NCBI GenBank assembly: GCA_026770705.1
Contig: JANJGN010000011.1
Span: 131,626,001 to 131,690,000, forward strand
Source of the DNA: Isurus oxyrinchus
Taxonomy: Eukaryota
Length of the DNA: 64,000 nt
Direction: 5' to 3'
This document shows positions 2,716-53,589 of the stretch, in pieces; positions within the stretch are counted from its first letter, which is position 1, and every line of letters begins with the position of its first letter. Made by a program: the position numbers and the translations under genes. The notes beneath the pieces are model-generated. The model was not told the origin of the DNA. It saw only the letters and a list, made by a program, of their open reading frames with translations, and searched no databases.

Positions 2716-2719
2716 ATCG

Positions 2720-5700
2720 AAACAAAGGACTTAGAAGCAGGAATAGGCCACTTGGTCCTTCAAGCCTGCTCTGCTATACAATAAGATCATGGCTAATCTG
2801 GTTGTGGTCTCAACTCCACTTTCCTGTCTGTCCCCTCATAACCCTTGACACCCTTGTTCATCAAAAATCTGCCTAATTCAGCCTTGAGGAAATTCAATAA
2901 CCCAGCCTCCATCGCTCCCTGGGAAAGAGAATTCCACATACTAATGACCCTCCTCATCTTAGTCTTAAAAGGGAGACCTCTTCTTAAACTGTGTCCCCTA
3001 GTTCTAGTCTTCCCCCATAAGTGGAAATGTCCTCCTGGTATCTACCCTGTCAAATCCCCTCAGGATCATATATGTTTCAATAAGACCACCTCTCATTCAT
3101 CTAAATTCCATGGTTATAGGCTCAGGTTGTTCAACCTTTCTTCATAGGATAAGTCCTTAATCCCAATAATGAGTTGAGTGAACCTCCCCTGTACTGCTTT
3201 TAATGTAATTATCTTTTTTTCAAATAAGGAGATCAAAACTATACGTAGTATTCCAGATGTGGCCTCACCAATGCCCGGTACCGCTGCAGTAAAACTTCCC
3301 TACTATTATATTCCATTCCCCTTGCAAAAAATGACAACATTCCATTTGCCTTTCAAATCACTTGCTGTACCTGCATACTAACTTTTGAGATCCATGTACC
3401 AAGACACCCCAATGCCTGTGTACCACTGAGTTCTGCAATTTCTCTCCATTTAAATAGTATACTGCTTTTTCATTCTTCCTGCCAAGGTGGACAAATTCAC
3501 ATTTTCTTACATTATACTGCATCTGCCAAATTTTTGTTCACTCATTTAACCTGTCTATATCCCTTTGCAGACTCTCTGCCTCCTCTTGATGACTTACTTT
3601 GCTATCTATCTTTGTGTTATTGGCAAATTTAGTTACCATACACTCGGTCCCTCATCCAAATTATTGATGTAGATTGTAAATAGTTGAGGCCCCGGTACTG
3701 ATTCCTGTGACACTCCACTTGTTACAGCTTGCCAACCTGAAAAAGACCCATTTATCCTTACTCTCTGCTTCCTGTTAGCTAACCAATAATTTATCCATGC
3801 TAATATGTTATCCTCTACATCATGTTCCATCACCTTTGGTGTGGCACGTTATCAAATGCCTTTTGGAAATCTAAGTACACCACATCTACAGGTTCCCCTT
3901 TATCCACTTTGCTTGTTACTCCCTCAAAAAATTCTAATAAATTAGTTAAACACCATCTCCCTTTCACAAAGTCATGTTGAATCTACGTTATGATTTACTA
4001 AGTGTCCTGATGTAATCTCCTTAATAATGGATTCTAGTAATCTCCCTATGACATTTGTTAAACTAACTGGTCTTTAGTTTCCTGCTCTCTGTCTCCCACC
4101 TTTCTTGATAGCTATTTTCTAATCCACTGGAACCCTTTCAGAATCTCAGGAATTCTGGTAGATTATAAACAAAGCATCTGCTACCTCTGCTTCCACTTCT
4201 TTTAAGACCCTGTGATACAGGCTATCTGGTCCTGGGCACTTGTCAGCCTTTAGGTCTAATAGCTTTCCCATCACCTTTTCTCTAGTGATTGTGATTGCTT
4301 TAAGTTCCTTGCTCCTGTTCACCTTTTGATTTTCAAGTATCTTTGGGAAGTTTTCTAAGTCCTCTATAGTGAAGACAGGCACAAAATACTTGTTCAATGC
4401 CTCAAAATACTTGTTTTCCATTATCAATTCCCCAGACTCCATTACCTATGGAACCAACACTAGTTATTCATTTCCTATTTAAATACTTGTAGAAACTCTT
4501 ACAATCAGTTTTTATATTACTAGCTAGCCTTCTCTCATACTCAACTTTCTCCCTCTGTATTGTTTTATTTAATTCATTCTTTACGGGTAAAGTCTTTGCT
4601 GAGCGTTATTAAATATCTCCTTAAGCCTGCCACTGCATCTCTACTGTCCTACCTTTTAAACTAGTTTCCCAATTCACTTTAGCTGACTCTACCTTCATAG
4701 CCTAATAATTTCCTTGACTCAAGTTGGGAATCCACACTTCACCGTTTCAAACTGAACATGAAATTCTATCACAGTATGACCGCTGTCACCTAAAGGCTAC
4801 TTGATCGTGAGTTTATTGATTAATCTTATCAATTAATTATTGCTTATTACCTGCTCCCTGGTTGGCTTTAGAATCTACTGCTCTCATAAATGGTCCTGCA
4901 TATACTCCATGAACTCCTAGGCTACTTTTGCCAATCTGATTTGTCCAATATAGATGTAGATTAAAGTCACCCATAATTATTGGTTTCTTACATGCCCCAT
5001 TTATATCTTCCTTTATTTTCTGTCTTACTGTGTAACTACTGTTAGGAGGCCTATAAACTACTCCCACAAAGTGACCTCTTACCTTTCCTATTTCTTATGT
5101 CTACCCAAACTGGCCCATTTGAGCTAAGGTCATCTCTCACTACTGTACTAATGACACCCTTAATTAACAGCACTACCCCATCACCTGCTTCTAGCTTTCT
5201 AACTTTTTGAAGTACCCTTCAACATTCAGGTCACTTTGCAACCATGTCCCTGATGCATATCCGGGCATACATGTTTATTTGTATCTGCGAATAATTCATC
5301 ATTTTTTTTTACGAATGCTGCTTGCATTCAGAGACAGAGCCTTTAACTCTGCTTTTTTCCCATTTTTGCAAACTCTGGCTTTACTTGCTGGTGCACTCTT
5401 AGGTTTGTACTCTCTGTCCCTTCCTGGCACACTCTAGTTATCTTTACCCAAATCGCTATCCTGCTCTATTACATCATTGTTACCCTGTCATTTTCTACAT
5501 CTCCTCTCACATGATCCCTTCCCCCTACGGTTCAGTTTAAAGATCTCTCTGTCACCCAAGTTATATGACTCGCCAGGACACTGGTTCCAAAATGGTCTAG
5601 TTAAAGCTCGTCTCAACGGTACAGCTCCCACTTTCCCCAGTACTGGTGCCAGTGCCCCGTGAATTGAAACCCATTTCTCTCATGCCAGTCTTTGAGCCAC

Positions 5701-5764: not shown

Positions 5765-6223
5765 GGAGGGAGGGAGTGGTGGAGTGGTATTATCACTGGG
5801 CTAGTAATCTAGAGACCCAGGGTAATGCTCTGGGGACTGAGGTTCAGATTCGACTATGGCAGTCTAGAGATGACCATGAAATCATTATCGATTGTTGTTA
5901 AAGCCCACCTGGTTCACTAATGTCCTTTAGGAAAGGAAATCTGCTGTCCTTACCCGGTCTGGCCTACATGTGAATCCAGACCCACATTTATTAACTCTTA
6001 AATGCCCTTTGAAGTGATCTAGCAAGCCACTCAGTTGTTTCAAACCACTACACAGTCTAAAAGGAATAAAACCAGTTGGACCGAGGCATTGACCGAGGCA
6101 GAGCAAATTACAATGGCAAATTCAGCTCTGGCGACTCTGTGAAGTCCTCCTTACTAATGTCTGTGGAATGGTGCCAAAATTTGGGGAGCTGTCCCACAGA
6201 ACTAGTCAAGCAACACCACAACT
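5765..6223 (+). mobile_element. 5' part of SINE-headed Zenon-like CR1 LINE (tRNA-like head running into APE start)
   Basis: Colinear with 34784-35260, including MVPKFGELSHR; truncated against the Gypsy element. Confidence 0.85.
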
Positions 6224-9084
6224 AGATTTGGATAATGCCTCCTGGGAATTTGTCAATTTTAATAGCCACAGATCCTTATACACGATTTGCCTTTCGATGT
6301 CTCCTCCACTTGTGCCATCTTTCAGGGAACAATGGAAAGCTTACTGTAGGGACTGCTCCAGGTTGTAGTCTATTAAGTCGATGTATTGGTGATAGGATTC
6401 ACTGGAAAAGAGCATTTGGCAAACCTAGAAGAAGCTTTAGAACGTTTCTTGCAAGCTGGAGTGCATTTTTAAAAAAAAATAAGTGCATGTTCCAAGCAAG
6501 GGAAGTAATCTATTTGAGTCACCGGGTAGATTCACAAGGGATCCACCTGGTTGAGGAGAAAGTGAGAGCCATAAGTGAGCCAAAAGAGCTCAAATCATTC
6601 CTAGGAATGATCAACTATTATGGGTGGTTCTTACCCAATTTGTCTACAGTGCTGGCCCCCTTGCATTCTCTACTCAAAAAGAACCAATGTTGGTCTTGTG
6701 AGGTGCCCCAGAAAGAAGCTTTCATAAAGGTGAAACAATTGTAGCACTCATCCAATCTATCAGCACATTACAACCAGACAAAAGAATTGGTGCTGACATG
6801 TGACACATCTCCCTACGGAGTGGTGCAGTGCTCTCTCATTGGATGGACAATTGCACAGAACGGCCAATAGGTTACATATCAAGAACACTCACCACAGCGG
6901 CAAAGCAATAATCGCAGATAGAAAAAGAAGGCCTGTCCATCATCTTTGGTGTCAAGAAATTACCCCAGTACGTACACGGCCAACATTTTACATTTCAGAC
7001 CACAAACCATTGCTAGGATTGTTTTGTGAGGACAAGGCTTTACCACTCATACCCTCAGCAAGAATACAACAATGGGTCTTAATTCTGGCAGCATACGAAT
7101 ACACTTTCATACATAGGCCTGACAATCAAATCGCACACATCGATGCCCTTAGTCATTTGCCTTTACAAGAAAATGATGAGCACGTCCCAGTTCCACAGGA
7201 ACTTGTTTAACTGTTAAATTTCTTAGATTCCTTGCCAGTATTTACTCAAGAGATCGAAGATTGGACAAGTTAGGACCCAATCTCATCTCAAGTACAAGAA
7301 CAACTACTACATGGTTGGTCACAGGAGCCTGTACCTGATGAAATGAAACCATACTTCATGAAAGATATGAAGACATGAAATAACCAACCAAAATCACATC
7401 TTATTGTGGGGAGCATGAGTGATAGCTCCGCCAAAGGGAAGGGAGCCACGTATAATTGAACTACACAGTGCCCATCCAGGAATTTCCCGAATGAAGACCG
7501 TGGCACGCAGCTATCTATGGTGGCCTGGGATGGATGGTGAAATAGAGAGTTTAGTAAAGCACTGGAAAAGTTGCCAGTGACAGCTCCAATACATCCATGG
7601 GAGTGGCCAGGTAGACCCTGGGTGTGGTTACACATTGACTACGTTGAACCTTTCCTGGGAACAATGTTTCTGCTCATTGTCGATGCCCATTCAAAATGGT
7701 TGGGCTTATATGAGGTGAAGTTCCCAACATTGGCTGCTACAATTAAGAAACTACCTCTGAGTTTTACCATTAACCGACTAACAGAAGTAGTCATTCCAAT
7801 AACAGCATGGCACTTATAAGTGCTGAGTTTCAACCATTTATCAGCCTCAATGTTATCACTCATGTGAAAACTGTACCGGGATGGGGACATTTGTGGAGCC
7901 TCCTTATTATCGGGTGGCCGAGTTGTGTTATCAATGATAGAGTTGATCTGCAGACTCTTCTTGAGTGGAAACTTTAAGTTTATTTAGAATATACTCAGCA
8001 GCAACTTCATGTGTGATTTCAACTCTAACTCCATCTCTACATTGATTCCTGAAGTAGCATGCGCTACTCTCTACCCTTCCTCAAACAGACTAGCCGAAAG
8101 GATGGTTCAAACATTCAAGGCAGGTATGAAAAAGCTAACTGGCAATTCCTTGGCAACCAAGCTTTCTTTTTTGTTACAGGACTAACCCTTATAAAACAAC
8201 AGGTGTCACATCTGTGGAGTTATTGTTGAAGTGCTGTCTCAGGATGAGTTTGAGTTTAATAATGCCAAATTTAGAGGAGAAAGTGGAAAGCAGTCAGGGA
8301 AGCCAGAAAACTAGACATGACTGGCATAGTCGCGAGAGGAAATTTACTGTGGGAGAGCCGGTATACACGAAGAATTTCAGGGAAGGACCAAAGTGGTTAC
8401 CAGGTGAAATAAGTGCGGTGACTGGACCTCTATCTTATCATGTGGAGGTGGAAGGCTGGATCATCCGTAAACGTGTGGATCATTTAAGGAAGAAAAAGAC
8501 AAGTCATCAAGGTATGGTTCCACCAGTGATCATGACCAGGTCTGCATTTCCTGTTGAGGATATTCAACCCAGGACTGACATGTCTGATGTTCCTGTAAGA
8601 GTTGAGGATACAGAACTGCAAGTGCCCACAGAAACACCTGATGTTCAGGCAACTCCGGAAAAGGAGGTCCCTGACAAAGAGTCTGAAGTTGTGGAGCTGT
8701 GACGTTCTATACATACCAGGAAACCACCTGAAAGACTGAACTTGTAAATTCCTTACCGGTGTAAATATTATGTTGCCTTGAAAAATATGTACTTGTAAAT
8801 ATATGTATAGCCGAGTTAAAGGGAGAGGAATGTAGTAATTATGATTTTATTTAGCATGTAATGTATCTTTAAGTGTAATACTTGTTAGGAAGAGCACATG
8901 ATCTGTAGTAACCATTAAGAGAGTAATGTGGGCTACCTCAGGAGTCAGTGTAGAGATGGAGTTAGAGTTGAAAGCCCATGTGTAGTCGCTGCTGAGTGTA
9001 TTGTAAATAAACTTAAAGCTTCTACCCAAGAAGTGTCTGCAGATCAACTCTAGAATTAATAACACAACTCGGCCACCCTATAAT
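6224..9084 (+). mobile_element. 5'-truncated Gypsy/Ty3 element (RT, RNase H, integrase; 3' LTR ~8831-9084)
   Basis: KELKSFLGMINYY, SDHKPLLGLF, PWEWPGRPW..HIDY, IVDAHSKW; PPT AAAGGGAGAGGA then TGTAGT at 8831. Confidence 0.92.
7878..8072 (-). repeat. Inverted copy of the element's own 3' LTR plus adjacent flank, inserted in integrase
   Basis: Reverse complement aligns with ~8918-9110. Confidence 0.85.
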
Positions 9085-10525
9085 AAGGAAGCTCCACAAA
9101 TGTTTCCATCTTCAATGATGGGGGAGTCCAGCACATCAGTGGAAAAGCTATGTCTGAAGCATTTGCAACAATCTTCAGCCAGAAGTGTTGAGTGGATGAT
9201 CCATCTCGGCCTCCTCTGGAGGTCCCCAGCATCACAGATGCCAGCCTTCAGCCAATTCGATTCACTCTATGTGATGTCAAGAAATGGCTGAGGACACTGG
9301 ATACTACAAAGGCTATGAGCCCTGGCAATATTCCGGCAAGAGTACTGAAGGCTTTTGCTCTAGAACTAGCTGCGCCCCAGCCAAGCTGTTCCAGTACAGC
9401 TACAACACTGGCATCTACCCGGCAATGTGGAAAATTGCCCAGGTATGTCCTGTCCACAAGAAGCAGGACAAATCCAACCCAGTCAATTACTGTTGCATCA
9501 GTCTCCTCTCCATCATCAGTAAAGTGATGGAAAGGGTCATCAACGGGACCTTCCAAACCTGCAACCTCTAACACCAAGGAGGAGAAGGGCAGCAGAAACA
9601 TGGGAACGCCATCACCTGCAAGTTACTCTCCAAGGCACACACCATCCTGACTTGGAAATATATCACCGTTCCTCCACTGTCGCTGCGTCAAAATCCTGGG
9701 TGCAGAATTTTCCGCCCGTTGGGCAGGCGTGTTCCTGACCGTATGAGTGTAAAATGATGTGATGATTTTGGGTGGACATCCTGACATCATCACGCACTCG
9801 CACAGTATTTTGGTCAGCAGGCGTCCGCTGGAGTCGGCAGCACACCCACTGACAATTAACAGGCCTAATACGACCATTAAAGTACTAATTGAATTAAATT
9901 TTTCGCTGCCTGTCCAACCTTACAGTGGCGGGCAGGCAAAAAGGTCAAGTGGCCTTTGGAATTTTTGCAAAACCTCATCCACAGGTGGGATGAGATTTAG
10001 TACAGTGATTAAAGAAAAAAATTCAAACTAATTTCTAATATGTTCCTGCTCAAGAGTCACAAGAGGGGACATATTATCAAGATTTTTAGATTCTTTATTT
10101 TCATTGTTCAAAATCTTCATCTCCCTGAGGCAGCCCTGCTTTAGGGAGCTTCTCCTGCACGCACCCGCATTCATGCACCAAGTTCCCTGCTCGCCCCCCA
10201 CATAGGCAGCGCTAAGTGCTGTAGTGCACATTTCACATTGGATGGGCCTTCATTGTCCCACCAGTATGAAATTGCCATTGGGTCCCGATCGCAGGCAGCA
10301 GTTGGCTTCCAACCACCCCCACTCGCCACCACCGAGCCTGCCCAACGAGGGCAAAATTATGCCCCTGGAATTCACTTTATAACAGCACTGTAGGTGCACC
10401 TACAACACATGGACTGTAGCAGTTCAAGAAGAAAGCTCACCACCACCTTCTGAAGGGCAATTGGAGATGGGAAATAAATGCTGGCCTAGACAATGACACC
10501 CAAATCCCGTGAAAGAATAAAAAAG
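9085..10525 (+). mobile_element. Zenon-like CR1 LINE fragment (internally deleted RT + 3' tail), interrupted by a MITE
   Basis: LDTTKAMSPGNIP, AKLFQYSYNTGIYPAMWKIAQVCPVHKKQDKSNP; tail ...AATAAATGCTGGCC..AAGAATAAAAA. Confidence 0.88.
9699..10364. mobile_element. Harbinger-type MITE
   Basis: TIRs GGTGCAGAATTTT / AAAATTATGCCC; 3-bp TSD CTG/CTG restores the LINE tail. Confidence 0.85.
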
Positions 10526-23125: not shown

Positions 23126-23899
23126 AGGCATTAAACCCTGCCTTGCATTTGCAAGGGGATAGTCTGAACCTTTGAAAGGCATTTGCTTCCAATTTAGCAG
23201 CTAGATGTCTGTGGGAAATAGGGTGTGAGAGATTGCACCATGAATTTGGTCCTCTCCATCTTAACATTTTTCTTAAAATCCTCATTGAAAGGGATCAATT
23301 TCTCTCTCACTCTGAATGGGCTGAGGACATGTGTTCCTGAGAGGTCTGCTACAGATGCCTCTAGATTTGTTAAGCACTCTTTCGTAGAACAATATGATTT
23401 GCGGCAGAAGATTCCACATTCTAATTGTGCTCTGTGAAAAAAATTGACTACAGTATTGATAATGCTTCTCACATGAATGTGGTTAGTATATTCATCCACA
23501 TTCCTTCATTCTTTCCCTTCATTCCTCCACTGTCGCAGGGTCAAAACCCTGGAACTCCCTTTCTCACAACACTGTGTGCCTACACCACAGAGACTGCAGA
23601 GGTTCAAGAAGGCAGCTCACCACCACCTTCCCAAGGGCAATTAGTGATGGGCAATAAATGCTGGCCCAGCCAGCGATGCCCACATCCCATGTTGGAAATG
23701 GCCACAAAAGGGCAGATAAGTTCGCAATGCATACCCATCGATGCCTGTCAGAGGCACACATGGAAGTGGGGTGCAGGTGTTATTTGATTAAGATTGGCAT
23801 ACTGCCAGCATTAATCACATTGTAAATTAGCAGCTTATCCTGTGTTTGATTCAGCAACAAACTAAGCATTAAACCAGGATAAAACAAAAGCAATTGTAC

Positions 23900-25470
23900 A
23901 ACAATCAACTCTGCAAAGACCTCCTTACTAACATTTGGGAGAGCTGTCCCACAGATTAGTGAAGTTTGGCATTGTCATGGTCACCAAACTAACATTCCAG
24001 AATCCTACAACACCATCTTTGGGTCTGTATTAACACACCAATAGGGTAAACTCAGCAGAAGCGGGGCCTTTGAGTCTTCAGCCAGCATGAGTTCTCCTTG
24101 GACTTTCAAGGACATTAGAAAGAAACACTTCACAGGGAAGCCTGGGAAATCTCCTGACACACCCACTTAAACTGCTTATAGCCCTGACTGCTCTCCAATT
24201 ATAATTTAAAAATCCACTCCAAATATAGCAGCAGCCTTATAGAGCCAAGCCAAATCTGTTACCTCTCCCCTCTGGGCATGTATATGACTAATGAACTTTG
24301 GGGCTGATAAGTCTGACCCAACCAATTATCACCCTAATAGCCTTCTCCCAAAACATCAATACAATATTAGATGGAGTCATCAACAGTGCAATCAACTTAA
24401 TTACCAGTGACCTGTTCTTGGAGGCTTAGTTTGGGTTCCACCAAGTCTGAAACTGAAGATGGTTGATGAGAAGAAAGCAGCTCCCAAGAAGGGAGGCAAG
24501 AAAGCCTTAAAGAAACCGGCAGCAAAGGGTAGTAAGAAGTGGTGAAGGTCAAGGAAGGAGAGTTACTCCATCTGCATCTATAAAGTGATGAAGCAGTTTC
24601 ACCCCGACACCAGTATCTTCGCCAAGGCCATGAACATCATGAACTCATTCATGAACGATATTTTTGAGCACATCGTGGGTGAGGCTTCCTGCCTGGCCCA
24701 TTACAACAAGCATAGCACCATCAGCTCTCAGGAGATCCAGACCACTATGTGACTGCTGCTGCCCGGGGAACTGGCCAAGTGCGTCGTGTCGGAAGGGACA
24801 AAGACGGTGACTAGGTACACCAGCTCCAAGTAAAACTCCACAATGGGCTGAAAAACACATACCCACTAATTTTTAGATTTATCAGAGTCTCGATACATCC
24901 ATGGACACAAAAGTTGAATACCAAAGGAAACTGGTGACAGAAGCTGCCCTTTGCAGAAAGGCAGGATTTGACTAAATAAGACACCCAAGATCCTTAGCAA
25001 AGCTGAAGTCAATAGGGGTCAAATGGCAAACCCTCTTGTAACTTCAGTCCTACCTAGCACAAAAGGAAGGTGGTTATGATTATCTGAGGCCATTCTTCAC
25101 AACTCCAGGTCACTGGCGCAGATGCTCCTTGAAGAAGAGTTTTCAGCTCAGCCATTTTCTCCTGCTTCTATCCCTCATAAGATTAGGAGTGGATTGTTCG
25201 CTGATGTTCATTTTCATCCAATAATGAAACATCCCATACTAGTTTATGACTGAATCTTAATAACGCTGAGGCCTGGATTAACAAGTGGCAAGTAATGACT
25301 ATCACAAACAATTGAAACCCTCAGCATCTCCCGAAGACCTACAATGGTATAACCATCACCAAAACCCTCATTGTCATTGTCTTCATAGACACTATTGACC
25401 AGAAGTTGAACTGGACCAGCTACATGAACACAGTGGCTACAAAAGAAGCATAAATGCTGGTTATCTGTGA
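23900..25470 (+). mobile_element. Highly decayed Zenon-like CR1 hosting the H2B copy
   Basis: Patchy colinearity with 35170-37430. Confidence 0.7.
24459..24833 (+). pseudogene. H2B: Histone H2B pseudogene (probable retrocopy)
   Basis: [50 protein letters not shown]...LLLPGELAK..VSEGTKTVTRYTSSK*; 125 codons, no frameshift, two premature TGA. Confidence 0.96.
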
Positions 25471-33598: not shown

Positions 33599-34299
33599 CG
33601 TGTGAGGCAGGCCTTCAAGAAAACCTACCAAGGGACAATGCACCCCGCCCCCCCCACCACCACCCCGCATGCTCATTTATGGACATGATCAAATTTGTGC
33701 ATATTTTAGTGTTCTTCACAAAGATTAGTTTGTTGTTGTATCATATCTTCACACTCTACCCATGGAAAATAATGTGAAGTAGTGGAAGGATTCTTATATT
33801 AATAAACAGCTGGACAGGCCACAATATGATGGGTGTAACCATAATTTTATGCCATCCAGTAGATAGTGGTCTGTCCTATACTGCGCAAGGTTTTTACGGG
33901 CTCCCATACATTATGATGAGGAGGAAGTTATCCATTTTTATTGGATGTTTGATCTCAATCCAGCCTCCTGAGTCATTACTCTGATCTCCAGTTACCAGGA
34001 ATGGCGTTGCACTTTCTGACTCAGAGGCTGTAAAGGTACCACTAAGACAGCACTTACTCCACAAAAGTTAGAGGATAAGCATTTGTTGAAAGAAATATTG
34101 AAAGAAATGAGCTTTTGTAAATAAACATGGGAGGCTTTCCAAAATATAGACTTGGAAGATTTGTTGAAAAATGTATAAATCGATTTATATCAGCAGCTAG
34201 TTGGTTAATTAAAATAATAATTTAACAGCTTAATTGTGAGAGCTTAATGATAAATCTTTATTTCCTACAGTTCTATTCCGGTGACTCTACGATGACTCA

Positions 34300-37200
34300 C
34301 TGAAGTTAATGGGAATCAGGATGAAAACGTTGCACTGGAGCTGGAATCATACTTAGCCAAAAGGTAGATGGTTGTGGTTGTTGGAGACCAATCATCTCAT
34401 CCTCAGGATATTGCTGTATAACTTTATCAAGGCAGTGCCTTAGGCCCAAACATCTTCAGCTGCGTCATAAATGACCTACCTCCCATAATAAGGTGAGAAA
34501 TGAGGATGTTCACTTATGGTTGATCAGTTCCATTCGTAACTCTTCAGATAATGAAGCAATCTGTGCCTATGTGCAGCAAGACCTGGTCAATATTTAAGTT
34601 TGGGCTTATAAATGGCAAGTAGCGTTCAGGCCACACGTGTGCCAGGCAATGACAATCTCCAATAAGAGAGAGTCTAACTACCTTCCCATGACATTTGATG
34701 ACATTACCATTGCCCTACCCCATCAGCATTAAAAGATTGGTCACCATTGACCAGAAATTTGGCTGAACTAACCACATAAATTTGGGGAGGTGATGACGTA
34801 GTGGTATTGTTGCTGGACTAGTATTCCAGAGACTCAGGGTAATGCTCTGGGGACCTGGGTTTGAATTCAATAAAAAGTCTGGAATTAAAAGTCTAATTTT
34901 GACCATGAAACCATTGTCGAATTGATGTAAAAACAAATCTGGTTCACTAATGACCTTTAGGGAAGGAAATCGGCCATCCTCGACTGGTCCGGCCTACATG
35001 AGACTCCAGACCCACGGCAATGTGGTTGACTCTTAAATGCCCTCTGAAATGGCCTAGCAAGCCATTCAGTTGTATCAAACCACTTCAAAGACTCAAAAAA
35101 GGAATAAAATCAGGCGGACCACCCGGCATTGACCCAGGCACTGAAAACGACAACAGCAAACTCAGCCCTGTCGACGTTGCAAAGTCCTCCTTACTAACAT
35201 CTGGGGCCAATGCCAAAATTGGGAGAGCTGTCTCACAGACCAGTCAAGAAACAGCCTGATATAGTCATCCTCACGGAATCATACCTTACAGGTAATGTCC
35301 CAGACATCCCTATTCTTGGGTATGTCCAGTCCCACGGGCAAGACATATCTAGCAGAGGTGGTGGCACAGTGGTATACAGTCAGGAAGGAGTTACCCTGGG
35401 AGTCCTCAACATCAACTCTCTTGGCATCAGGTCAAACTTGGGCAAGGAAACATCCTGCTGATTACCATGTATCACCCTCCCTCAGCTGATGAGTCAGTGC
35501 TCCTCCATGTTGAACACCACTTGGGAGAAGCACTGATAGTGGCTAGGGCACAGAATGTACTCTGGGTGGGGGACTTCAATATCCATCACCAAGACTGGCT
35601 TGGTAGCACCACTACTGACTGAGCTGGCTGAGTCCTAAAGGACATAGCTGCTAGACTGGGTCTGTGGCAGGTGGTGAGGGAACCAACAAGAGGGAAAAAC
35701 AAACTTGACCTCATCCTCACCAACCTGCCTACTTCAGATGAATCCGTCCCTGACAGTATCAGAAGGAGTGACCACCACACAGTCGTTACGAAGCTGAAGT
35801 CCCGCCTTCACATTGAGGATACCCTTCATCATGTGTGGCACTACCACCATGCTAAATGGGATAGAATTCGAACAGACCTAGCAATTCAAGTCTGGGCATC
35901 CATGTGGTGCTGTGGACCATTAGCAGTAGCAGAATTGTACTGAAACACAACCCCTAACCTCATAGCCCAGCATATGCCCCACTTTACCATTACCTTCAAG
36001 CAAGGGGATCAACCCTGGTTCAATGAAGAGTGCAGGAGGGCATACCAGGAGCAGCACCAGGCATACCGAAAAATGAGGTGTCAACCTGGTGAATCTATAA
36101 CGCAGGACTACTTGCATGCCAAACAGCATGAGCAGCGAGTGATAGACAGAGCTAAGTGATCCCACAACCAACGCATCAGATCTAAGCTCTGCTGTCCTGC
36201 CATATCCAGTTGTGAATGGTGGTGGACAATTAAACAACTCACTGCAGGAGGAGGCTCCACAAATGTCCCCATCCTCAATGATGGGGGAGCCCAGCACATC
36301 AGTGCAAAATGTAAGGCTGAAGCATTTGCTACAACCTTCAGCCAGAAGTGCTGAGTGGATGATCCATCTCGGCCGCCTTCGAAAGTCGCCACCATCACAG
36401 ATGCCAGTCTTTAGCCAATTCGATTCACTCCACCTGATGTCAAGAAATAGCTAATGGCACTGGACCCTGCAAAGTCTATGGGCCCTGACAATATTCCAGC
36501 AATAAAACTGAAGACTTGTGCTCCAGAACTTACCAAGCCCTTAGCCAAGCTGTTCCAGTACAGCTGCAACACTGGCATCTACCCGGAAATGTGGAAAATT
36601 GCAGAGATATGCCCTGTACACAAAAAGCAGGACAAATCTAACCCAACCAACTACCACCCCATCAGTCTACTCTCGATCAACAGTAAAGTAATGGAAGGGG
36701 TCATCAACAGTGCTATCAAGCAGCACTTACTTAGCAATAACCTCATTGACGCCCAGTTTGGGTTCCGCCAGGGCCACTCAACTCCTGACCTTATTACAGT
36801 CTTGCTTCAAACATGGACAAAAGAGCTGAACTCCCGAGGTGAGGTGAGAGTGACGGCCCTTGACATCAAGGCCGCATTTGACTGAGTGAGATCAGGGAGC
36901 CCTCGCAAAACTGGAGTCAATGGGAATCAGGAGGAAAACACTCCACTGGTTAGAGTCATACCTAGCACAAAGGATATTGTTGTTGGAGGTCAGTCATCTC
37001 AGCTCTAGACATCACTGCAAGAGTTCCTCAGGATAGTGTCTGAGGCAAAACCATCTTCAGCTGCTCCGTCAATGACCTTCCTTCCATCATAAGGGCAGAA
37101 TTGGGGATGTTCTCTGATGATTGCACAATGTTCAGCACCATTTGTGACTCCTCAAAAGCTAAAGCAGCCCTTATGCAAATGCAGCAAGACCTGTACGATA

Positions 37201-38530
37201 TCCAGACTTGGGCTGACAAGTGGCAAGTAACAGTCACACCACACAAGTGCCAGGCAATGACTGTTTCCAACAACAGAGAATCTAACCATCACCTCTTGAT
37301 TTTCAATGGCATTACCATCACTGAATCCCCCACTATCAACATCCTGGGGGTTACCATTGACCAGAAACTGAACTGGGCTAGTCATATAAATACTGTGGCT
37401 ACAGCAGCAGGTCAGAGGCTAGGAATCCTGTGATGAGTAACTCACCTCCTGACTCCCCAAAACCTGCCCAACGTTTACAAGGCTCAAGTCAGGAGTGTGA
37501 TGGAATACGCCCCATTTGCCTGGATGAATGCAGCCCCCACAACACTCAAGCAGCTTGACACCATCCAGGGTAAAGCAGTCCACTTGAATGGCATCACATC
37601 CACAAACATTCATCCCCTCCACCACCGATGCATAGTGGCAGCATCTACAAGATGCACTGCAGGAATTCACCAACGCTCTTTAGGCAGCACCTTCCAAACC
37701 CATGACCACTGCCCTAGAAGGACAAGGGCAGCAGATAGCTGGGAACACCTGGAAGTTCCATCCAAGTCACTTACCATCCTGAATTGGAAATATATCGCCG
37801 TTCCTTCACTGTCACTGGTTAAAATCCTGGAACTCCATTCCTAACAGCAGTGTGGGTGTACCTACACCCAGGGACTGCAGCAGTTCAAGAAAGCTGCTCA
37901 CCACCACCTTCTCAAGGGCAACTAGGATGGGCAATAGATGCTGGCCCAGCCAGCGAAGCCCACATCCCCTGAATGAATAAAAAATATACTGTGGCTGCAA
38001 GATCAAATCAGGGGCTGCATATTTTGCAGTGAGTAACTCACTTCCCAACTACCTAATATAACCTTTCCACCATCTACAAGACACAAGTCTAGACTGTGAT
38101 GGAATACTTTCCACTTACCTGGATGAGTGCAACTCCAACTGTACCCTCTGTTGCCCAGCATCACAGGACAAAGCAGGCTGCTTGATTAGTACCCCATTCA
38201 TCACCTTAACAGTTTACTTCCTCCATCATTGGCACAAAGTGGCAACAGTGTGTACCATCTACAAGAAACACTGCAGCAACTCGCTAATGATTCTTCAACA
38301 ACACCTTCCAAACCCTCAGCCTCTACCACCTAAAACAACAAGAGCTACAGTCCATTGGAATACAACCACCTACAAGTTTCCCTCCCAAGTCACATTCCAT
38401 CCTGACTTGCAAATATATTGACATTCCTCCACCATCGCTGGGTCAAAAACCTGGAACTTCCTCCCAAACAGTACCTCATGGGTTGCAGCGGTTCAAAACG
38501 GCAGCTCACCACCACCTTCTCAAGGGCATT
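34300..38530 (+). mobile_element. Older Zenon-like CR1 3' half (34300-34783 and 37985-38530) split by a younger copy
   Basis: The two halves rejoin at ..CCACATAAAT|ACTGTGGCT.., compared with 37380-37400. Confidence 0.8.
34784..37984 (+). mobile_element. Apparently full-length ~3.2-kb SINE-headed CR1-clade (Zenon-like) LINE with a single decayed APE-RT ORF
   Basis: tRNA-like A box (34794-34804) and B box (34858-34868). APE: PDIVILTESYL, GDFN, PTRGKNKLDLILTN, SDHH. RT: ALDIKAAFD, FSDD. Tail CCCACATCCC..GAATAAAAAA. Confidence 0.92.
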
Positions 38531-40315
38531 TAGTGTGTGTGTGTATGTGTGTGTGTATTTCTCTAGCAAATGCAAATGAAGTAACTGTTAAATGAAAAAT
38601 GATGAGACAAGATTCATTTTCAGAAAATATGGGAGATAATTTAATATTGAATTGTTACCCTGTAGCTTTTAGCACAAGATTGTAAAAACTCAATAAAAAT
38701 GCTATCTGTCGCACAATGTTCCTTTAATCTGGTAATGTATATTTAAGGTGTATTGTCCTCATGAGAAATTGTTTGACAAACTTTTATCATTTATTTATGA
38801 AGACAAAATATGACAACATAAAGTGTAATGAATGCACAACTTCTTCTCATATTGTCAATGACATTGTGATGCATGATACTCTTCTCCCTCTCCTTGAACA
38901 GCTTTTATATTTTTTAGTGTATCAAGTTTTATTAATTCTTTAGGTTGAGACCATTAAATAAAATAATTATTCTGCTGTATAAACGTAGGCTGGTATTCAG
39001 TCCTACAAATATAACATCAGATTCACAAAACGTAGTACAAATGTTTAAATAAATTATTTACATTCCTTTTCAAACAAAAAAAAACAATTGTAATAGATAA
39101 ATTTCCCATTCTGTATGAACTCAGTATCCCCAACATAACTTCACATGTTCCCCCAAGTCTGTGGGAGGGGTATATGTGGTAAAATAAATATGCAGAAGGA
39201 AGCCTTCACTAGTAGCTTAGGATTTCCACATTTTAGCTCTGTAACCAAAGGACCTTCATCATTCTGTCTAGAACTGCTGGTAGAGCTTCACTGTTCTCAG
39301 GGTCTCTCTCCATTCATATCTTTGAGATTTCACTCACCCAGTAAACCATATGAGTAAAACTCATTAAACCTCTGTAGGTAGCTTTCAGTGGAAGCTGAAG
39401 AAAAATGTTTACTGTGTTTTGTCCAGAAATATGGTAGTACCACTGTGTGTCAGCTCTCTCACCTCTAAACCTGTAGATGCGCGCTGAAAAATGTCAATAA
39501 CCTAATGAAGGCACTCACCATATCATATCAGATACTCTTTTGTTTCTTCAACGGGTACAAAACACTGTTCCCTCTCTAAAGTGACTATTCACACTGCAAA
39601 AAGGCTAAAGCCGGGCAGTCGCTTTGTGTCCAACAGTATGTGTCAATATTTCCACTAATGGTAATTACTTGCATGCAGAGATTTCCAAGCTCTTACTCCA
39701 TTTTAACAGGATGATAACATCACATCTTTTACTTCAGCTGTTTCATGCCACCTCATAGACACTCCTCAGCTGTTAACTTGGTTGCAAGAGAAATTATGCA
39801 GAGCTCCTGTGACAGACAGGAAACCAGAAGGAGCCTTTGAGAAATCAAATGACGGGCTTTCTTTGAGGAGCAGGCCATGAAACTGCTAAAGAGACACCTA
39901 CTCCAGTTATTGGAGATTTTGAGATTCTTGGACAAATTGAGATGGCAGGTCACCTTCAAAACTATCATGGCATCCCTGTGAAGCGGTACAAGCTTCCTTT
40001 TCTGCCCCTTAATCTAAAGTTACACATTTTTAATTTTTACCTGATTTCCTGGTTTGGTCTGAAGGTTGGCCTCAGATCTCTCAAAGTATTGGAAGTGTTG
40101 CTTCAGTAAGCCCCTGATGTACTTAATAATGGATCTGGTGCAGGCTTGTGGACCAGTGGTTGTCTTGAATGTAGGTAAGCAGCAAAGGAGTCATAAGTAA
40201 GTCAGCATAATGTAATGCCTCCTTGGTTTCCCAGAAACCAACATTTCATTTGCTGGGTATCCATAAATAATGGTGAATAGTGGACAATCATATAAAATAA
40301 ATCACAGTGACATGT

Positions 40316-50605: not shown

Positions 50606-52371
50606 GGGCCAAGCGACTCCACAAACATGATCAATGTCTGGCAGTCTCAGCACAGTGCAGCAGGAGACTCCAATGAATCCTGTGTAAGCCCAGCTTCAAT
50701 GCCTGAAGAGTGCAGAGTCAGAAAACCTAGCAGAGGTGAGTTAAAAAAAAACTTAAGTTCTTGGCCAGAACAAGTTAAGAAAGCGTTTTAAGTCAGTTTT
50801 AAACTGCACCATAAACAGCCTGAGTCCCACGCCAGCATCTGACCACATGATAGCCAAGCTCAGTCCAAGCAGAAAAAAAATGAAATCAAATTTAACAATA
50901 ATCAGCAAAGGCCAGGAACCAACAGTTTCATGTCCCGAAAATACTTAAAAATGTGGAGCAGACTCAGGTTGATTCGGGGAGCTGCAACTGCATAGGATAG
51001 TTCAGAAAATTATGCAAAGCTAAACCAACCAAATGATCCATGAGATTTAGGTACCACTCTAAGTGGAAACACAACCATGCTTCTTAGGTGAGGTCAAAGA
51101 TTAGGGATTTTTGTTTTGGAACATAGACATCTCAGCTGATGGTCATCTCACAAACTTTAAATTGGACAGGGGGGCCAGTGTTACAGTTCTCTCAGACAAG
51201 GAACAATGGCTGGTGAGCCAATGGTTGATGCCACCCTCAACACAGCTGTACGGAGTAGGCAGCATCAAACTCCTGGTTAAAAGTACTCTGCAGGCGATGC
51301 TCAGGTACGAAGGCAAAAGAATATGAGAGATCCAATAATGTTACTTTTAAGCCGAAAAGCCTGTGTTGACATTGACCTCCTACAGAAAACTGACGAGGTC
51401 AATCAGCAAAGGCCTGGTTCCAAATTTAAAAACGAGATCCCTAAGCTCCTTACTGGGTGACTGAGGACTGCATACAGGATTACCCTGAGGGAGGATGCTA
51501 AGCCTGTGTGCCTGTTCATGCCACGAGAAATACCCCCTTCACTCATGAAACAAGTGCAGCAACAACTGGACGAGATGATAAAAATGGGTCATCTTCCACG
51601 TCACTCAGCCAACTGAATGGTATTCCAGGATGGTCCCAGTCCCAAAACCGAATGGTCCATCTCTAGCTGGTCAAATTGACACAGTTCAATAAAGCCGTGG
51701 CAAAAGAAGTCCATCCTATGTCCTTGGTGGTCAACAACCTGACCAAACTCTCTAAAAGCACAGTGTTTTCAAATCTTGATGCTAACAGTGGCTGTTGGCA
51801 AGTTCCACTAGAACTGAAGTCCAGAATGCTGAAGACTGTCATTACCCACTTTGGCAGATTCTGCTTCAACCGCTTATTGTTTGGAATTACCTCCGCATTG
51901 GAAATATTTCGATGCATGATGTCAGCCATTTTACAAGGCCTAGAGGATGTCATCTGCCAAATGGACAATGTTTTGGTCCACAGCACGACAGTGGAAGAAC
52001 ACGACAAAGGCTCACGGTGGTCCTAGAACACTCGTAGGAAGTAGGGCTGACACTGAAAAGAAATGTGAATTCTCCAAGACCTCTATTCATTTCATAGGAC
52101 ACATCTTCAGCAACAAGGGCATCGTGGCGGACCCACAGAAAACAAAAGCTATCAGCAAGTTTCCAACCACATCTTCGATTCCGGACCTCCAGAGATTCCT
52201 GCATATGGTGAACCAGCTGGCAAAATTTTTACCCAATCTGGCACAGGTGTATATGACAATTGTATATGACAAACACAGAAGCAATGGTAAGAGCATTAAA
52301 GGAGATGTTCATGAGCCATCTGGATTAGTAATTCAGAGGCCCAGGTTAATACTCTGGGTTAATACTCTTGG

Positions 52372-53237
52372 ACTCTCCTCACCGTCTAAGGGCCCAAACA
52401 CTCCTTTCAAGTGAAGCAGCATTTCACTTGCATTTCCCCCAACTTAGTCTACTGCATTCGTTGCTCCCAATGTGGTCTCCTCTACATTGGAGAGACCAAA
52501 CGTAAACTGGGCGACTGCTTTGCAGAACACCTGCGGTCTGTCCGCAAGAATGACCCAAACCTCCCTGTCGCTTGCCATTTTAACACTCCACCCTGCTCTC
52601 TTGCCCACATGTCTGTCCTTGGCTTGCTGCATTGTTCCAGTGAAGCCCAACGCAAACTGGAGGAACAACACCTCATCTTCCAACTATGCACTTTACAGCC
52701 TTCCGGACTGAATATTGAATTCAACAACGTTAGGTCTTGAGCTCCCTCCTCCATCCCCACCCCCTTTCTGTTTCTCCCTTCCTTTTGTTTTTTTTCCAAT
52801 AAATTATATAGATTTTTCTTTTCCCACCTATTTCCATTATTTTTAAATATTTTTAAATCTTTTATGCTCCCCCCACCCCCACTAGAGCTATACCTTGAGT
52901 GCCCTACCATCCATTCTTAATTAGCACATTCGTTTAGATAATATCACTAACTTTAACACCTATTTGTTCTTTTGTTCTGTTGTTTGTGACATCTTTTGAT
53001 GATCTGCTTCTATCACTGTTTGTTTGTCCCTACAACCACATCAACCCCCACCACTTCTCTCTCTCTCTCTTCCCCCCACCCCCGCAACACACCTTAAACC
53101 AGCTTATATTTCAACTCTTTCTTGGACTCACTCAAGTTCTGTCGAAGGGTCATGAGGACTCGAAACGTCAACTCTTTTCTTCTCCGCCGATGCTGCCAGA
53201 CCTGCTGAGTTTTTCCAAGTAATTCTGTTTTTGTTTT
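52372..53237 (+). mobile_element. Young 5'-truncated Penelope-like element
   Basis: GIY-YIG ORF 52411-52740 differs from 12479-12808 at 4 of 109 aa. Confidence 0.92.
53135..53173 (+). ncRNA. Minimal type I hammerhead ribozyme motif (variant core)
   Basis: Identical to 12045-12083. Confidence 0.75.
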
Positions 53238-53589
53238 TAATACTCTGGGGACTCTGGTTCAACTGCCATCATGATAGTTGGTGGAATTTAACTTCAATTA
53301 ATAAAAAATCTGGAATTGAAAGTTAGTCTCAGTAAAAGTGACCATGAAATTATCATCGATTGCCATAAATACCTATCTGGTTTATTAAGATCCTTTAGGG
53401 AAGCAAATCTGCCATCCTTACTCATCTGGCCTACATGTGACTCCAGATCCACAGCAATGTGGTTGACTCTTAACTGCCCTCTGAAATGGCATAACAAAGC
53501 ACTCAAGGGCAATTAGGAATGGGTAACAAATGTTGACATTGCCAGAAATGCCCATGTCCTATCAAAGAATAAAAAAAAACTTCAGGATT

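What the first reader, a model, noticed from the sequence alone, without database searches (positions are those of the whole stretch)
34784..37984. Autonomous-type LINE with a tRNA-SINE head (possible Pol III-driven, ORF1-less LINE)
Seen: about 400 bp of SINE sequence with A/B-box-like motifs runs into the APE-RT frame, with no room for an ORF1. The same head-to-ORF junction recurs independently at 5765-6223, so it was propagated as a unit and is not a chance nested insertion. Established: CR1-clade LINEs normally use Pol II-type 5' UTRs and usually encode ORF1, and SINEs borrow LINE tails rather than the reverse. Inference: this family captured a SINE as promoter/5' UTR. This raises the questions of how a 3-kb, possibly uncapped transcript is translated and whether internal T-runs are depleted.
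Basis: partly seen in the sequence, partly recalled or inferred. Interest (0 to 1): 0.8.

Follow-up and report, generated by a model that had tools for sequence, protein, structure and literature searches.

The report
Shark LINE carrying a SINE head
A decayed 3.2-kb jumping gene in a shark-like genome starts with the same promoter-like head and body as a small parasitic SINE and runs straight into its own enzyme gene, and this head-plus-gene unit was copied as one piece many times.

Summary
Window 34784-37984 is one insertion. An older related LINE is split by it and resumes within 2 nt on the far side.

The unit has four parts in order:
- a SINE-type head and body (34784-35068)
- a 118-nt linker
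- a decayed single APE-RT frame
- a tail shared with the SINE

There is no room for an ORF1.

The same body-to-linker-to-APE order recurs in three other places:
- at 5783-6215 in the window, at 76% identity
- in 4 whale-shark gene models, with 4 more that start in the linker
- in one contig of a public run

The scan has also noted this layout on other DNA of this genome, in at least four unchecked first-reader notes.

- ATG 35210 is not the ancestral start. The first endonuclease motif lies upstream of it, inside the supposed UTR.
- Lack of ORF1 is ordinary for L2-type LINEs.
- T-runs are no rarer than base composition predicts.
- ARAGORN and Rfam find no tRNA in the decayed heads.

So a propagated LINE family with a SINE head is well supported. 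Pol III transcription and the direction of capture remain untested. I found no published description, and Repbase and Dfam could not be checked.

The parts
34299..34781 (+). 5' part of an older, related, 5'-truncated LINE copy (the host) that the element split
   Evidence: Matches element 2127-2608 at 69.5%. Its last letters align to the element's own 37349-37391.
34784..34870 (+). SINE-type head with an A-box-like motif (34794-34804) and a B-box-like motif (34858-34868). Compared with the plain SINE, this copy lacks about 33 nt just behind the B-box-like motif.
   Evidence: nhmmer finds the head again at 5775-5851 and 52319-52359. Motif mismatches are 1 (A box) and 2 (B box). There is no tRNA call by ARAGORN or Rfam. 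In run X17, 35 contigs lose likeness exactly before 34784 (table 7).
34871..35068 (+). SINE body. It is shared with the plain SINE.
   Evidence: nhmmer gives 53303-53503 (E 1.7e-30) and 5860-6032 (E 4.5e-28); alignment A1.
35069..35186 (+). Linker between the SINE body and the first APE motif. It is absent from the plain SINE and present in LINE 5' copies. In the APE frame it reads as a basic-rich stretch, with two TGA stops where whale-shark model P0004 has Arg.
   Evidence: nhmmer gives 6034-6166 (E 2.1e-19) and a partial match at 23889-23939. Frames are shown. P0004 residues 1-58 match 35049-35207.
35187..37844 (+). Single APE-RT reading frame, decayed by several stops and frame changes. 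The first APE motif, LLTNIWG, starts at 35187 in the frame of 35022.
   Evidence: ORF pieces. Pfam APE on 35467-35622 and RVT_1 on 36454-36885 and 37101-37433. Copy 2 has the motif and the following residues in one frame. The Pfam profile start aligns at the Asn of LLTNIW in P0002 (E 0.091, weak).
37845..37984 (+). 3' untranslated tail ending in TGAATGAATAAAAAA. Its last 74 nt (37911-37984) are shared with the plain SINE.
   Evidence: The tail is found at 7 other places in the window; alignment A2. 53502-53576 matches element 3128-3201. 1410 contigs (X1) and 1438 contigs (X7) lose likeness right behind 37984.
37986..38528 (+). 3' part of the split host LINE
   Evidence: Matches element 2607-3137 at 67.4%. 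It resumes within 2 nt of where the left part stopped.
5765..6219 (+). Second copy of head, body, linker and first APE motif, broken off after about 17 codons. LTR-retrotransposon pol sequence follows.
   Evidence: 5783-6215 matches element 17-470 at 76.0%; alignment A1. LLTNVCGMVPKFGELSHR reads in one frame.
53239..53576 (+). Plain SINE, equal to the element's head and body joined to the element's last 74 nt. Its first part lies at 52300-52359, ahead of an insertion of about 880 nt. Both breakpoints follow the letters TCA (CTCA in the SINE, in copy 2 and on the LINE's 3' side).
23889..25441 (+). Older, more diverged LINE copy (68-71% identity). It begins inside the linker and has no head or body upstream.
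   Evidence: nhmmer matches linker positions 87-137 at 23889-23939 and the ORF start at 23933-24104. BLAST pieces are and the sequence.

Best explanation
The stretch is a dead, full-length copy of an ORF1-less LINE family of the CR1/L2 group (probably L2). The 5' end of this family is the head and body of the abundant tRNA-type SINE of the same genome.

Shown:
- The head, body, 118-nt linker, single APE-RT frame and tail were reverse-transcribed and inserted as one 3.2-kb unit.
- The same order is present in several independent, diverged copies, so it was inherited from master copies and not made anew each time.
- The local SINE equals the two ends of this unit, joined at a 3-4-nt microhomology.
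- The coding frame begins in or right behind the SINE body, not at ATG 35210.

Inferred:
- The head and body act as the family's internal promoter and leader. That is why full-length copies begin at the nucleotide where SINE copies begin, 10-12 nt ahead of the A-box-like motif.
- The single protein then recognises the shared tail, as in other stringent L2-type LINEs. The SINE rides on the same tail.

Which polymerase reads the unit is open. My odds are Pol II-type use of the SINE-derived leader about 0.5, Pol III from the A/B boxes about 0.3, and read-through with 5' processing about 0.2. The direction of descent (LINE captured the SINE front, or the SINE is a deletion derivative of the LINE) is about even.
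For: One unit: the host LINE matches element 2127-2608 up to 34781 and element 2607-3137 from 37986. The two host halves abut within 2 nt. No SINE tail or A-run lies between the body and the linker.

Family:
- Copy 2 (5783-6215) is collinear with element 17-470 at 76%.
- I compared 16 short protein models found with the N-terminal piece with the element by tblastn. Eight reach upstream of 35204, and all 8 match the linker.
- Four of those 8 (P0002, P0004, P0022, P0025) also match the SINE body (34947-34988, 35049-35207 twice, 34960-35085) ahead of the APE part.
- None of the 16 joins an intact APE start to any other upstream sequence.
- Seven of the 16 were looked up by source: six of the 8 (P0002, P0004, P0006, P0015, P0022, P0023) are whale-shark (Rhincodon typus) EukProt models, and P0001 is an unnamed ENA sequence. 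P0024 and P0025 are listed only as EukProt.
- X19 record 16 lies on 35017-35291 and bridges body, linker and APE start (table 8).

Abundance and shared ends: 398,182 and 324,181 contigs of two DNA runs lay on the stretch at 80% likeness. Contigs lose likeness together at 34784 and at 37984.

SINE equals the two ends.

Frame: LLTNIWG lies upstream of ATG 35210, in one frame with the next residues in copy 2. Pfam profile position 4 aligns at that Asn in P0002, whereas P0001, which starts at the Met, begins at profile position 24.
Against: - Only one copy (this one) has both its ends and the whole ORF in view.
- Gene models are chosen for open frames, which biases which copies are seen.
- No intact full-length protein with this N-terminus was found among 1.84 billion representatives: 21 hits, all either fragments or distant.
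- The head is not recognised as a tRNA by ARAGORN or Rfam. This copy's head lacks about 33 nt behind the B-box-like motif.
- An older copy at 23889 begins inside the linker without a head. This fits 5' truncation, but it also fits a headless ancestor.
- No in-frame ATG lies between the TAG at 35055 and the APE motif in either window copy, so the start of translation is unknown.
- Read laying listed 32 pieces out of about 684,000, so no genome-wide count of the junction was possible.
Confidence: 0.8

Rival explanations
1. Pol III-driven autonomous LINE. The A and B boxes of the head recruit TFIIIC and Pol III. A 3.2-kb uncapped transcript runs to the first T-run behind the element, is translated inefficiently, and is copied in cis.
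For: - The unit's 5' end (34782-34784) lies 10-12 nt ahead of the A-box-like motif at 34794. That is the usual Pol III start distance, which I recall and did not test.
- The sense strand has 2 T4+ runs in 3.2 kb against 21 A4+ runs. Comparison with the other copies shows that one of the two, at 34897, is private to this copy.
- Across 10 other family pieces there are 13 T4+ runs in 7.2 kb, against 5.7 per kb in the whole window.
- The unit has a single ORF and a small size.
- In the L1 system, Pol III transcripts retrotranspose without ORF1p, while a Pol II-driven Alu transcript needs it (PMC2666806, abstract read).
Against: - The shortage of T-runs is what the T-poor composition predicts: 2 observed against 3.6 +/- 1.7 expected.
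- The box motifs carry 1 to 3 mismatches, and no tRNA fold is detected.
- The tail carries AATAAA, which suits Pol II 3' processing at least as well.
- There are no RNA ends. All runs were kept as contigs, and 'RNA' is only a guess for X17 and X19.
- From general knowledge, long protein-coding Pol III transcripts have no natural precedent.
Confidence: 0.3
2. LINE-first origin. The body and linker are the native 5' region of an old L2-type LINE, and the SINE is its two-ended (bipartite) deletion derivative. The tRNA-type head either was part of that LINE or passed between SINE and LINE by template switching inside the shared body.
For: - The plain SINE equals the LINE's front and its last 74 nt, joined at a TCA/CTCA microhomology. 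One deletion or one template jump explains both borders.
- If instead the LINE had captured the SINE front, the join would have had to fall at the very point where the SINE's tail begins.
- Kojima 2018 proposes this route for SINE bodies but found it only for RTE and Vingi (PMC5786205, abstract and Discussion read).
- The distance from head to APE motif here is about 316 nt, and the vertebrate Deu-domain is given as 330 bp (PMC4824008, passage read).
Against: - SINEs with the same head, Deu body and tail are reported from sharks, a chimaera and the coelacanth (PMC5499810, section 7 read). The head-bearing LINE would therefore have to be equally old, or the SINE would have to have been remade repeatedly.
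- Here the LINE is seen only in shark data.
- Deu bodies also occur behind 5S heads and with other tails (PMC4824008, passage read).
- I had no reference Deu sequence to test how far the domain reaches.
Confidence: 0.4
3. Repeated or one-off chimeras. The reverse transcriptase reached the 5' end of a LINE RNA and jumped onto a SINE RNA, as in U6-L1 chimeric pseudogenes, so the head was never part of a replicating master.
For: Template-switch chimeras with a small RNA at the 5' side of a LINE piece are well known (PMC4476161, search listing and start of abstract only; PMC5786205, Discussion read). A single event of this kind is a likely origin of the first head-bearing copy.
Against: - The junction is at the same nucleotides in the two window copies, which are 24% apart.
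- The same order occurs in 4 short EukProt gene models, three of them confirmed as whale-shark.
- The LINE side always starts at its full 5' end, not at varying truncation points.
- The SINE side always lacks its tail.
Confidence: 0.06
4. Two separate insertions. Either a SINE landed at the 5' edge of a truncated LINE, or a LINE homed into a SINE copy.
For: SINEs and LINEs are dense here, with at least 12 family pieces in 64 kb. Another note on this genome describes a Tx1 LINE behind a tRNA-type head (s1-871382, unchecked).
Against: - There is no SINE tail or A-run between body and linker.
- There is no second tail behind 37984.
- The host LINE closes around the whole unit within 2 nt.
- The arrangement recurs.
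Confidence: 0.03

Closest known systems
SacSINE1-type Deu-SINEs and their partner LINE L2-2_CM (Nishihara 2006, recalled and not held; Luchetti 2017, PMC5499810, abstract and sections 6-7 read)
   Same: Both have a tRNA-type head with A and B boxes, a conserved body, and a tail shared with an L2-type LINE. Both are reported in sharks including the whale shark, with very high copy number.
   Different: The paper shows only tail homology between SINE and LINE. Here the LINE also carries the SINE's head and body at its 5' end. I could not align to the SacSINE1 or L2-2_CM consensus, because Repbase is not on hand and supplements are closed.
Bipartite non-autonomous LINEs and SINEs with LINE 5' parts in their bodies (Kojima 2018, PMC5786205; the examples Bov-tA, WALLSI, RIME/ingi and NARTc/L1Tc are partly recalled)
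   Same: The short element shares both the 5' and the 3' end with the autonomous LINE, as expected from an internal deletion.
   Different: The paper reports this only for RTE and Vingi (with Ingi and R2 for bipartite LINEs). There the small-RNA head sits on the SINE alone. Here the autonomous element itself has the head, and the clade is CR1/L2.
ORF1-less L2 LINEs: ZfL2-2 and UnaL2 (PMC3880073, passages read)
   Same: Both have a single APE-RT ORF, a small size, and stringent recognition of their own 3' tail, which a partner SINE shares.
   Different: No SINE-type head is described for them, and in assays they are driven by Pol II promoters.
5' end switching of LINEs (SolRTE in Nicotiana, bioRxiv 10.1101/2022.11.04.512097, abstract and passages read; the mammalian L1 5' UTR turnover is recalled)
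   Same: A conserved LINE body and tail take on a new 5' region that brings a promoter.
   Different: The donors described are other LINEs, host mRNAs or flanking promoters, not a Pol III-type SINE head.
Cassandra, Helenus and Ajax: LTR elements with 5S or tRNA-like sequences (Kojima 2024, PMC10886601, passages read)
   Same: A small-RNA or SINE-derived promoter module is built into another class of retroelement, probably by SINE insertion.
   Different: Those are non-autonomous LTR elements a few hundred bases long. Here the carrier encodes its own endonuclease and reverse transcriptase.

Membership tests
LINE (APE-type non-LTR retrotransposon) | Reverse transcriptase domain | tested here: met
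   RVT_1 scores 42.8 bits (cut-off 29.6) on 36454-36885, with a second piece at 26.1 bits on 37101-37433.
LINE (APE-type non-LTR retrotransposon) | N-terminal apurinic-type endonuclease domain | tested here: inconclusive
   Exo_endo_phos_2 scores 24.1 bits and Exo_endo_phos 17.7 bits, both below their cut-offs, on a 51-residue piece. P0001 scores 18.9 bits and P0002 13 bits. The motif order (N..L..K..EL, then DIVILTES) fits an APE. The copy is too decayed to reach a curated score.
LINE (APE-type non-LTR retrotransposon) | Insertion without LTRs, many 5'-truncated copies, a common 3' end | tested here: met
   Seven other tails in the window sit on variably truncated copies. Likeness is lost in common behind 37984 in 1410 and 1438 contigs.
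L2 clade (as opposed to CR1) | Placement of the RT in a tree with reference L2 and CR1 sequences; an L2-type tail | not testable with these tools
No labelled reference sequences were on hand. The link to L2 rests on PMC5499810 (SacSINE1 tail = L2-2_CM tail) and on my recall that L2/MIR ends resemble TGAATGAA.
tRNA-derived SINE (SINE2), SacSINE1 type | Head derived from a tRNA, with A and B boxes | tested here: inconclusive
   The A box has 1 mismatch and the B box 2-3 mismatches, with a spacing of 64. ARAGORN finds 0 tRNAs and Rfam gives no tRNA hit. Folds are not tRNA-like, with z-scores of -1.99 and +0.52.
tRNA-derived SINE (SINE2), SacSINE1 type | Non-coding and short | tested here: not met
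   The unit is 3.2 kb and carries APE-RT. It is therefore not a SINE, although its two ends equal one.
DeuSINE superfamily | Body homologous to the Deu-domain consensus | not tested
Pol III transcription unit | No T4+ terminator between the start and the 3' end | tested here: inconclusive
   This decayed copy has 2 T4+ runs against 3.6 +/- 1.7 expected. Other copies carry 13 in 7.2 kb. The ancestral state is unknown.
Pol III transcription unit | Transcripts that start at the head and are made by Pol III | not testable with these tools
   All runs were kept as contigs, which cannot show starts, ends or strand.

The most novel reading that the evidence does not exclude
The head and the conserved (Deu-type) body are the working 5' end of a long-lived L2-type LINE lineage, an 'autonomous SINE'. 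Its RNA starts at the Pol III start site of the head, and its only ORF opens inside or right behind the conserved body. The hugely abundant SacSINE1-type SINEs would then be its internal-deletion derivatives. That would give the first LINE source for one of the deeply conserved SINE body domains, whose origin is unexplained, and the first protein-coding retroelement that relies on a type-2 Pol III promoter.
Probability: 0.2. Interest if true: 0.85.

Novelty: new variant of a known kind. Interest (0 to 1): 0.6.

Why it matters
SINEs are defined as non-coding riders that borrow only the tail of a LINE, and LINEs as Pol II-type units with their own 5' UTR. A LINE family that carries the SINE's head and conserved body at its own 5' end blurs that division.

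It matters for three reasons:
- It offers a concrete test of Kojima's idea that SINE bodies come from LINE 5' regions, here for a CR1/L2-group element and possibly for the Deu-domain.
- It raises the question of how a unit with a Pol III-type front is transcribed and how its ORF is started. No in-frame ATG is seen behind the body in the copies at hand.
- The family is very abundant in two related organisms, with hundreds of thousands of contigs laid. It is also present in whale-shark gene models, so material for such tests exists.

If the structure is already in Repbase or Dfam, the novelty falls away but the biology remains of interest.

Tried and rejected
- Chance nesting is rejected. The host LINE closes around the unit, and there is no tail between body and linker.
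- The one-off chimera reading is rejected as the explanation for the copies seen, because the junction is identical in diverged copies.
- tRNA detection gave nothing: ARAGORN on the whole window, Rfam on both heads and single-strand folds.
- T-run depletion was not significant.
- A conserved tail hairpin was looked for with RNAalifold on 7 tails. Only 5 weak pairs at -2.28 kcal/mol came out, so I make no claim.
- I asked whether copy 2 (5765-6219) and the co-oriented LINE pieces at 9086-10524 are one rearranged copy. The flanks match no split repeat, so this is undecided.
A metagenome pattern scan found 0. A protein search with the 79-codon frame 35020-35256 found nothing.
- Read laying at 80% likeness laid so many contigs that only 32 pieces of about 684,000 were listed. 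No count of junction-bearing copies came out. The summed word depths, which the tool itself calls unfit for ranking, were 0.50 million in the linker bin, 2.25 million in the body bin and 0.72 million in the first ORF bin of X1.
- An intact full-length protein was not found. There were 21 hits, all fragments or distant.
- For prior description I ran searches and read the papers named in the report. None describes a LINE with a tRNA-type or Deu-type front. Nishihara 2006 is not held. Supplementary alignments of PMC5499810 (figs S1, S2: SacSINE1 against L2-2_CM) could bear on this and were not seen. Repbase and Dfam are not on hand.

Full report
WHAT IS THERE

Window 34784-37984 (+) is a 3.2-kb element. 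A self-comparison of the window shows that it sits inside an older, related LINE copy. 34299-34781 matches the element's own positions 2127-2608 at 69.5%. 37986-38528 matches positions 2607-3137 at 67.4%. Local alignment of the two flanks to the element's internal sequence shows that the host stops at 34781 and resumes within 2 nt behind 37985. Any target duplication is therefore 2 nt at most. The whole stretch, from the first base of the SINE-like head to the last A of the tail, is one insertion.

ANATOMY

- Head, 34784-34870. The A-box-like motif at 34794 has 1 mismatch, and the B-box-like motif at 34858 has 2 mismatches (the consensus motifs are recalled).
- SINE body, 34871-35068.
- Linker, 35069-35186.
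- Decayed single frame, 35187 to about 37844. It gives Pfam endonuclease and reverse-transcriptase matches: RVT_1 at 42.8 bits is above the cut-off, and the endonuclease scores are below theirs.
- Tail of 140 nt, ending in TGAATGAATAAAAAA.

The plain SINE of the window equals the two ends of this unit. 53293-53505 matches element 78-285, and 53502-53576 matches element 3128-3201. Both breakpoints follow TCA/CTCA. Its head lies at 52300-52359, ahead of an insertion of about 880 nt.

ARAGORN and Rfam do not recognise a tRNA in either decayed head, and the folds are not tRNA-like. The 'tRNA' origin therefore rests on the box-like motifs and on what the literature says of this type of SINE.

IS THE JUNCTION A FAMILY FEATURE?

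Yes, on four lines of evidence.

(a) Window 5783-6215 aligns to element 17-470 at 76.0% over 458 columns. The alignment runs through the point where the plain SINE departs and through the start of the coding region. This copy breaks off at about 6219, so it shows the junction but not a whole LINE.

(b) I searched 1.84 billion protein representatives with the N-terminal piece and got 21 hits, all short fragments or distant. Two word-index searches added five more models. I compared 16 of these models with the first 917 nt of the element by tblastn, with this outcome:
- Eight reach upstream of 35204, and all 8 match the linker.
- Four of those 8 (P0002, P0004, P0022, P0025) also match the SINE body ahead of their endonuclease part.
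- Two start at about 35210.
- Six are cut further downstream behind unrelated sequence, as expected of 5'-truncated copies.
- None joins an intact endonuclease start to a different upstream sequence.

Of the seven models looked up by source, six are EukProt models of the whale shark, Rhincodon typus, and P0001 is an unnamed ENA sequence. P0024 and P0025 are listed only as EukProt. P0024 runs from the linker through the endonuclease start into the reverse transcriptase.

(c) In a public run, a 586-nt contig (X19 record 16) lies on 35017-35291 with 50 other letters and 5 gaps. It therefore bridges body, linker and coding start.

(d) The scan's first readers noted the same layout at four other places of this genome (s1-900707, s1-897413, s1-897452, s1-897358). 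These notes are unchecked and I count them as leads only.

The family is very abundant. 398,182 and 324,181 contigs of two DNA runs of two coded organisms lay on the stretch at 80% likeness. Likeness is lost in common right before 34784 and right behind 37984.

1. ATG 35210 is not the ancestral start. The first endonuclease motif, LLTNIWG, starts at 35187 in another frame of this copy, and a 1-nt length difference separates it from the following residues. In copy 2 the motif and the next residues are in one frame. Most other copies have Val where this copy has Met. Pfam aligns profile position 4 to the Asn of that motif in P0002 (weak, E 0.091), while P0001, which starts at the Met, begins at profile position 24.

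2. The frame of the motif can be followed up through the linker as a basic-rich stretch. The two TGA stops of this copy stand where P0004 has Arg. Between the TAG at 35055 and the motif there is no in-frame ATG in either window copy. The start of translation is therefore unknown, and the 'UTR' is short or absent.

3. Lack of ORF1 is ordinary if the element is of the L2 type. L2 elements may encode one ORF, and ZfL2-2 lacks ORF1p (PMC3880073, passages read). The tail of the SacSINE1-type SINE is that of L2-2_CM (PMC5499810, abstract and sections 6-7 read). I could not test clade membership.

4. T-runs are not depleted beyond composition. The sense strand has 2 T4+ runs against 3.6 +/- 1.7 in dinucleotide shuffles, and 21 A4+ runs against 16.8 +/- 3.2. 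Other family pieces carry 13 T4+ runs in 7.2 kb. The strand is T-poor, as LINE sense strands usually are.

HOW IT MOST LIKELY WORKS

Shown: the unit is copied whole and from the same first base as the SINE, and its tail is the SINE's tail.

Inferred: the head and body serve as the internal promoter and leader of the LINE. The single protein binds the shared tail and copies its own RNA, and the SINE uses the same tail.

The polymerase is open. The position of the 5' end, 10-12 nt ahead of the A-box-like motif, fits a Pol III start, but an internal Pol II promoter would keep the same end. The AATAAA in the tail, the lack of any natural precedent for a long coding Pol III transcript, and the known habit of LINEs to swap 5' regions (bioRxiv 10.1101/2022.11.04.512097, abstract and passages read) make Pol II-type use somewhat more likely. 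My odds are 0.5 for Pol II, 0.3 for Pol III and 0.2 for read-through with 5' processing.

DIRECTION OF DESCENT

The SINE is the LINE minus its middle, with a microhomology at the join. One deletion or template jump on a head-bearing LINE explains both borders. Capture of the SINE front by a headless LINE would need the join to fall exactly where the SINE's tail begins.

Against LINE-first, SINEs with this head, body and tail are reported from sharks, a chimaera and the coelacanth (PMC5499810, section 7 read). The LINE would then have to be equally old. An older copy at 23889 starts inside the linker without a head, which is uninformative because truncation explains it.

The head-to-motif distance of about 316 nt is close to the 330 bp given for the vertebrate Deu-domain (PMC4824008, passage read). 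The whole linker may therefore belong to that domain. I had no reference sequence to test this.

COMPARISON WITH WHAT IS KNOWN

- Kojima 2018 (PMC5786205, abstract and Discussion read) found LINE 5' parts in SINE bodies only for RTE and Vingi. That paper states that SINEs cannot encode a protein, and it notes that no LINE match to the conserved SINE bodies had been found.
- Small-RNA-type promoters inside other retroelements are known for non-autonomous LTR elements (PMC10886601, passages read).
- Small-RNA-to-LINE chimeras made by template switching are known (PMC4476161, listing only).
- My searches found no description of a LINE whose own 5' end is a tRNA-type SINE head plus conserved body.
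- Repbase, Dfam, Nishihara 2006 (not held) and the supplements of PMC5499810 could not be consulted, so prior cataloguing is not excluded.

VERDICT

The reading 'a LINE family with a SINE head, no ORF1, propagated as a unit' is well supported (0.8). 'Pol III-driven' and 'captured from a SINE' are open. I class it as a new variant of a known kind, with interest 0.6. The scan has met the same layout elsewhere in this genome, in notes that have not been followed up.

LIMITS

- Only one complete copy was in view.
- Read laying listed too few pieces for a count.
- All runs were contigs, so nothing can be said about RNA starts, strand or level.

Noticed in passing
window 6235-8700 and 7880-9110: LTR-retrotransposon pol fragments (RT, RNase H and integrase-like ORFs) follow the broken head copy. 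An inverted repeat of 193 nt at 86% (7880-8072 / 8918-9110) runs with its right arm into the LINE piece that starts at 9086.
   Followed up: partly
window 9086-9544, 9548-9699, 10364-10524: Three LINE pieces (element 1466-1925, 2906-3047 and 3043-3201) are co-oriented and collinear with the head copy at 5765-6219. They could be one rearranged full-length head-bearing copy, but the flanks gave no proof.
   Followed up: partly
window 52300-52359 and 53239-53576: The plain SINE is itself split by an insertion of about 880 nt in its head. Other first readers report a Penelope element with a hammerhead at 53135-53173 (s1-901509). I did not check this.
   Followed up: no
window 35020-35259: A frame that opens at ATG 35020 inside the SINE body stays open for 79 codons, across body, linker and the start of the endonuclease. 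The main frame of this copy, by contrast, is full of stops. The open frame is not kept in copy 2, and a protein search with it found nothing.
   Followed up: partly
window 23889-25441: An older LINE of the same kind (68-71% to the element) begins inside the linker, directly behind unrelated DNA and about 190 nt after the tail of another copy (23522-23697).
   Followed up: partly
window 34827-34914: Rfam's only match on the head region was far below threshold: the conserved region of the lncRNA family CLRN1-AS1 (13.3 bits, E 0.75). It is probably chance. I mention it because some conserved lncRNA segments derive from old SINEs.
   Followed up: no
window 38535-38560: A (TG)n microsatellite directly follows the 3' end of the split host LINE.
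   Followed up: no
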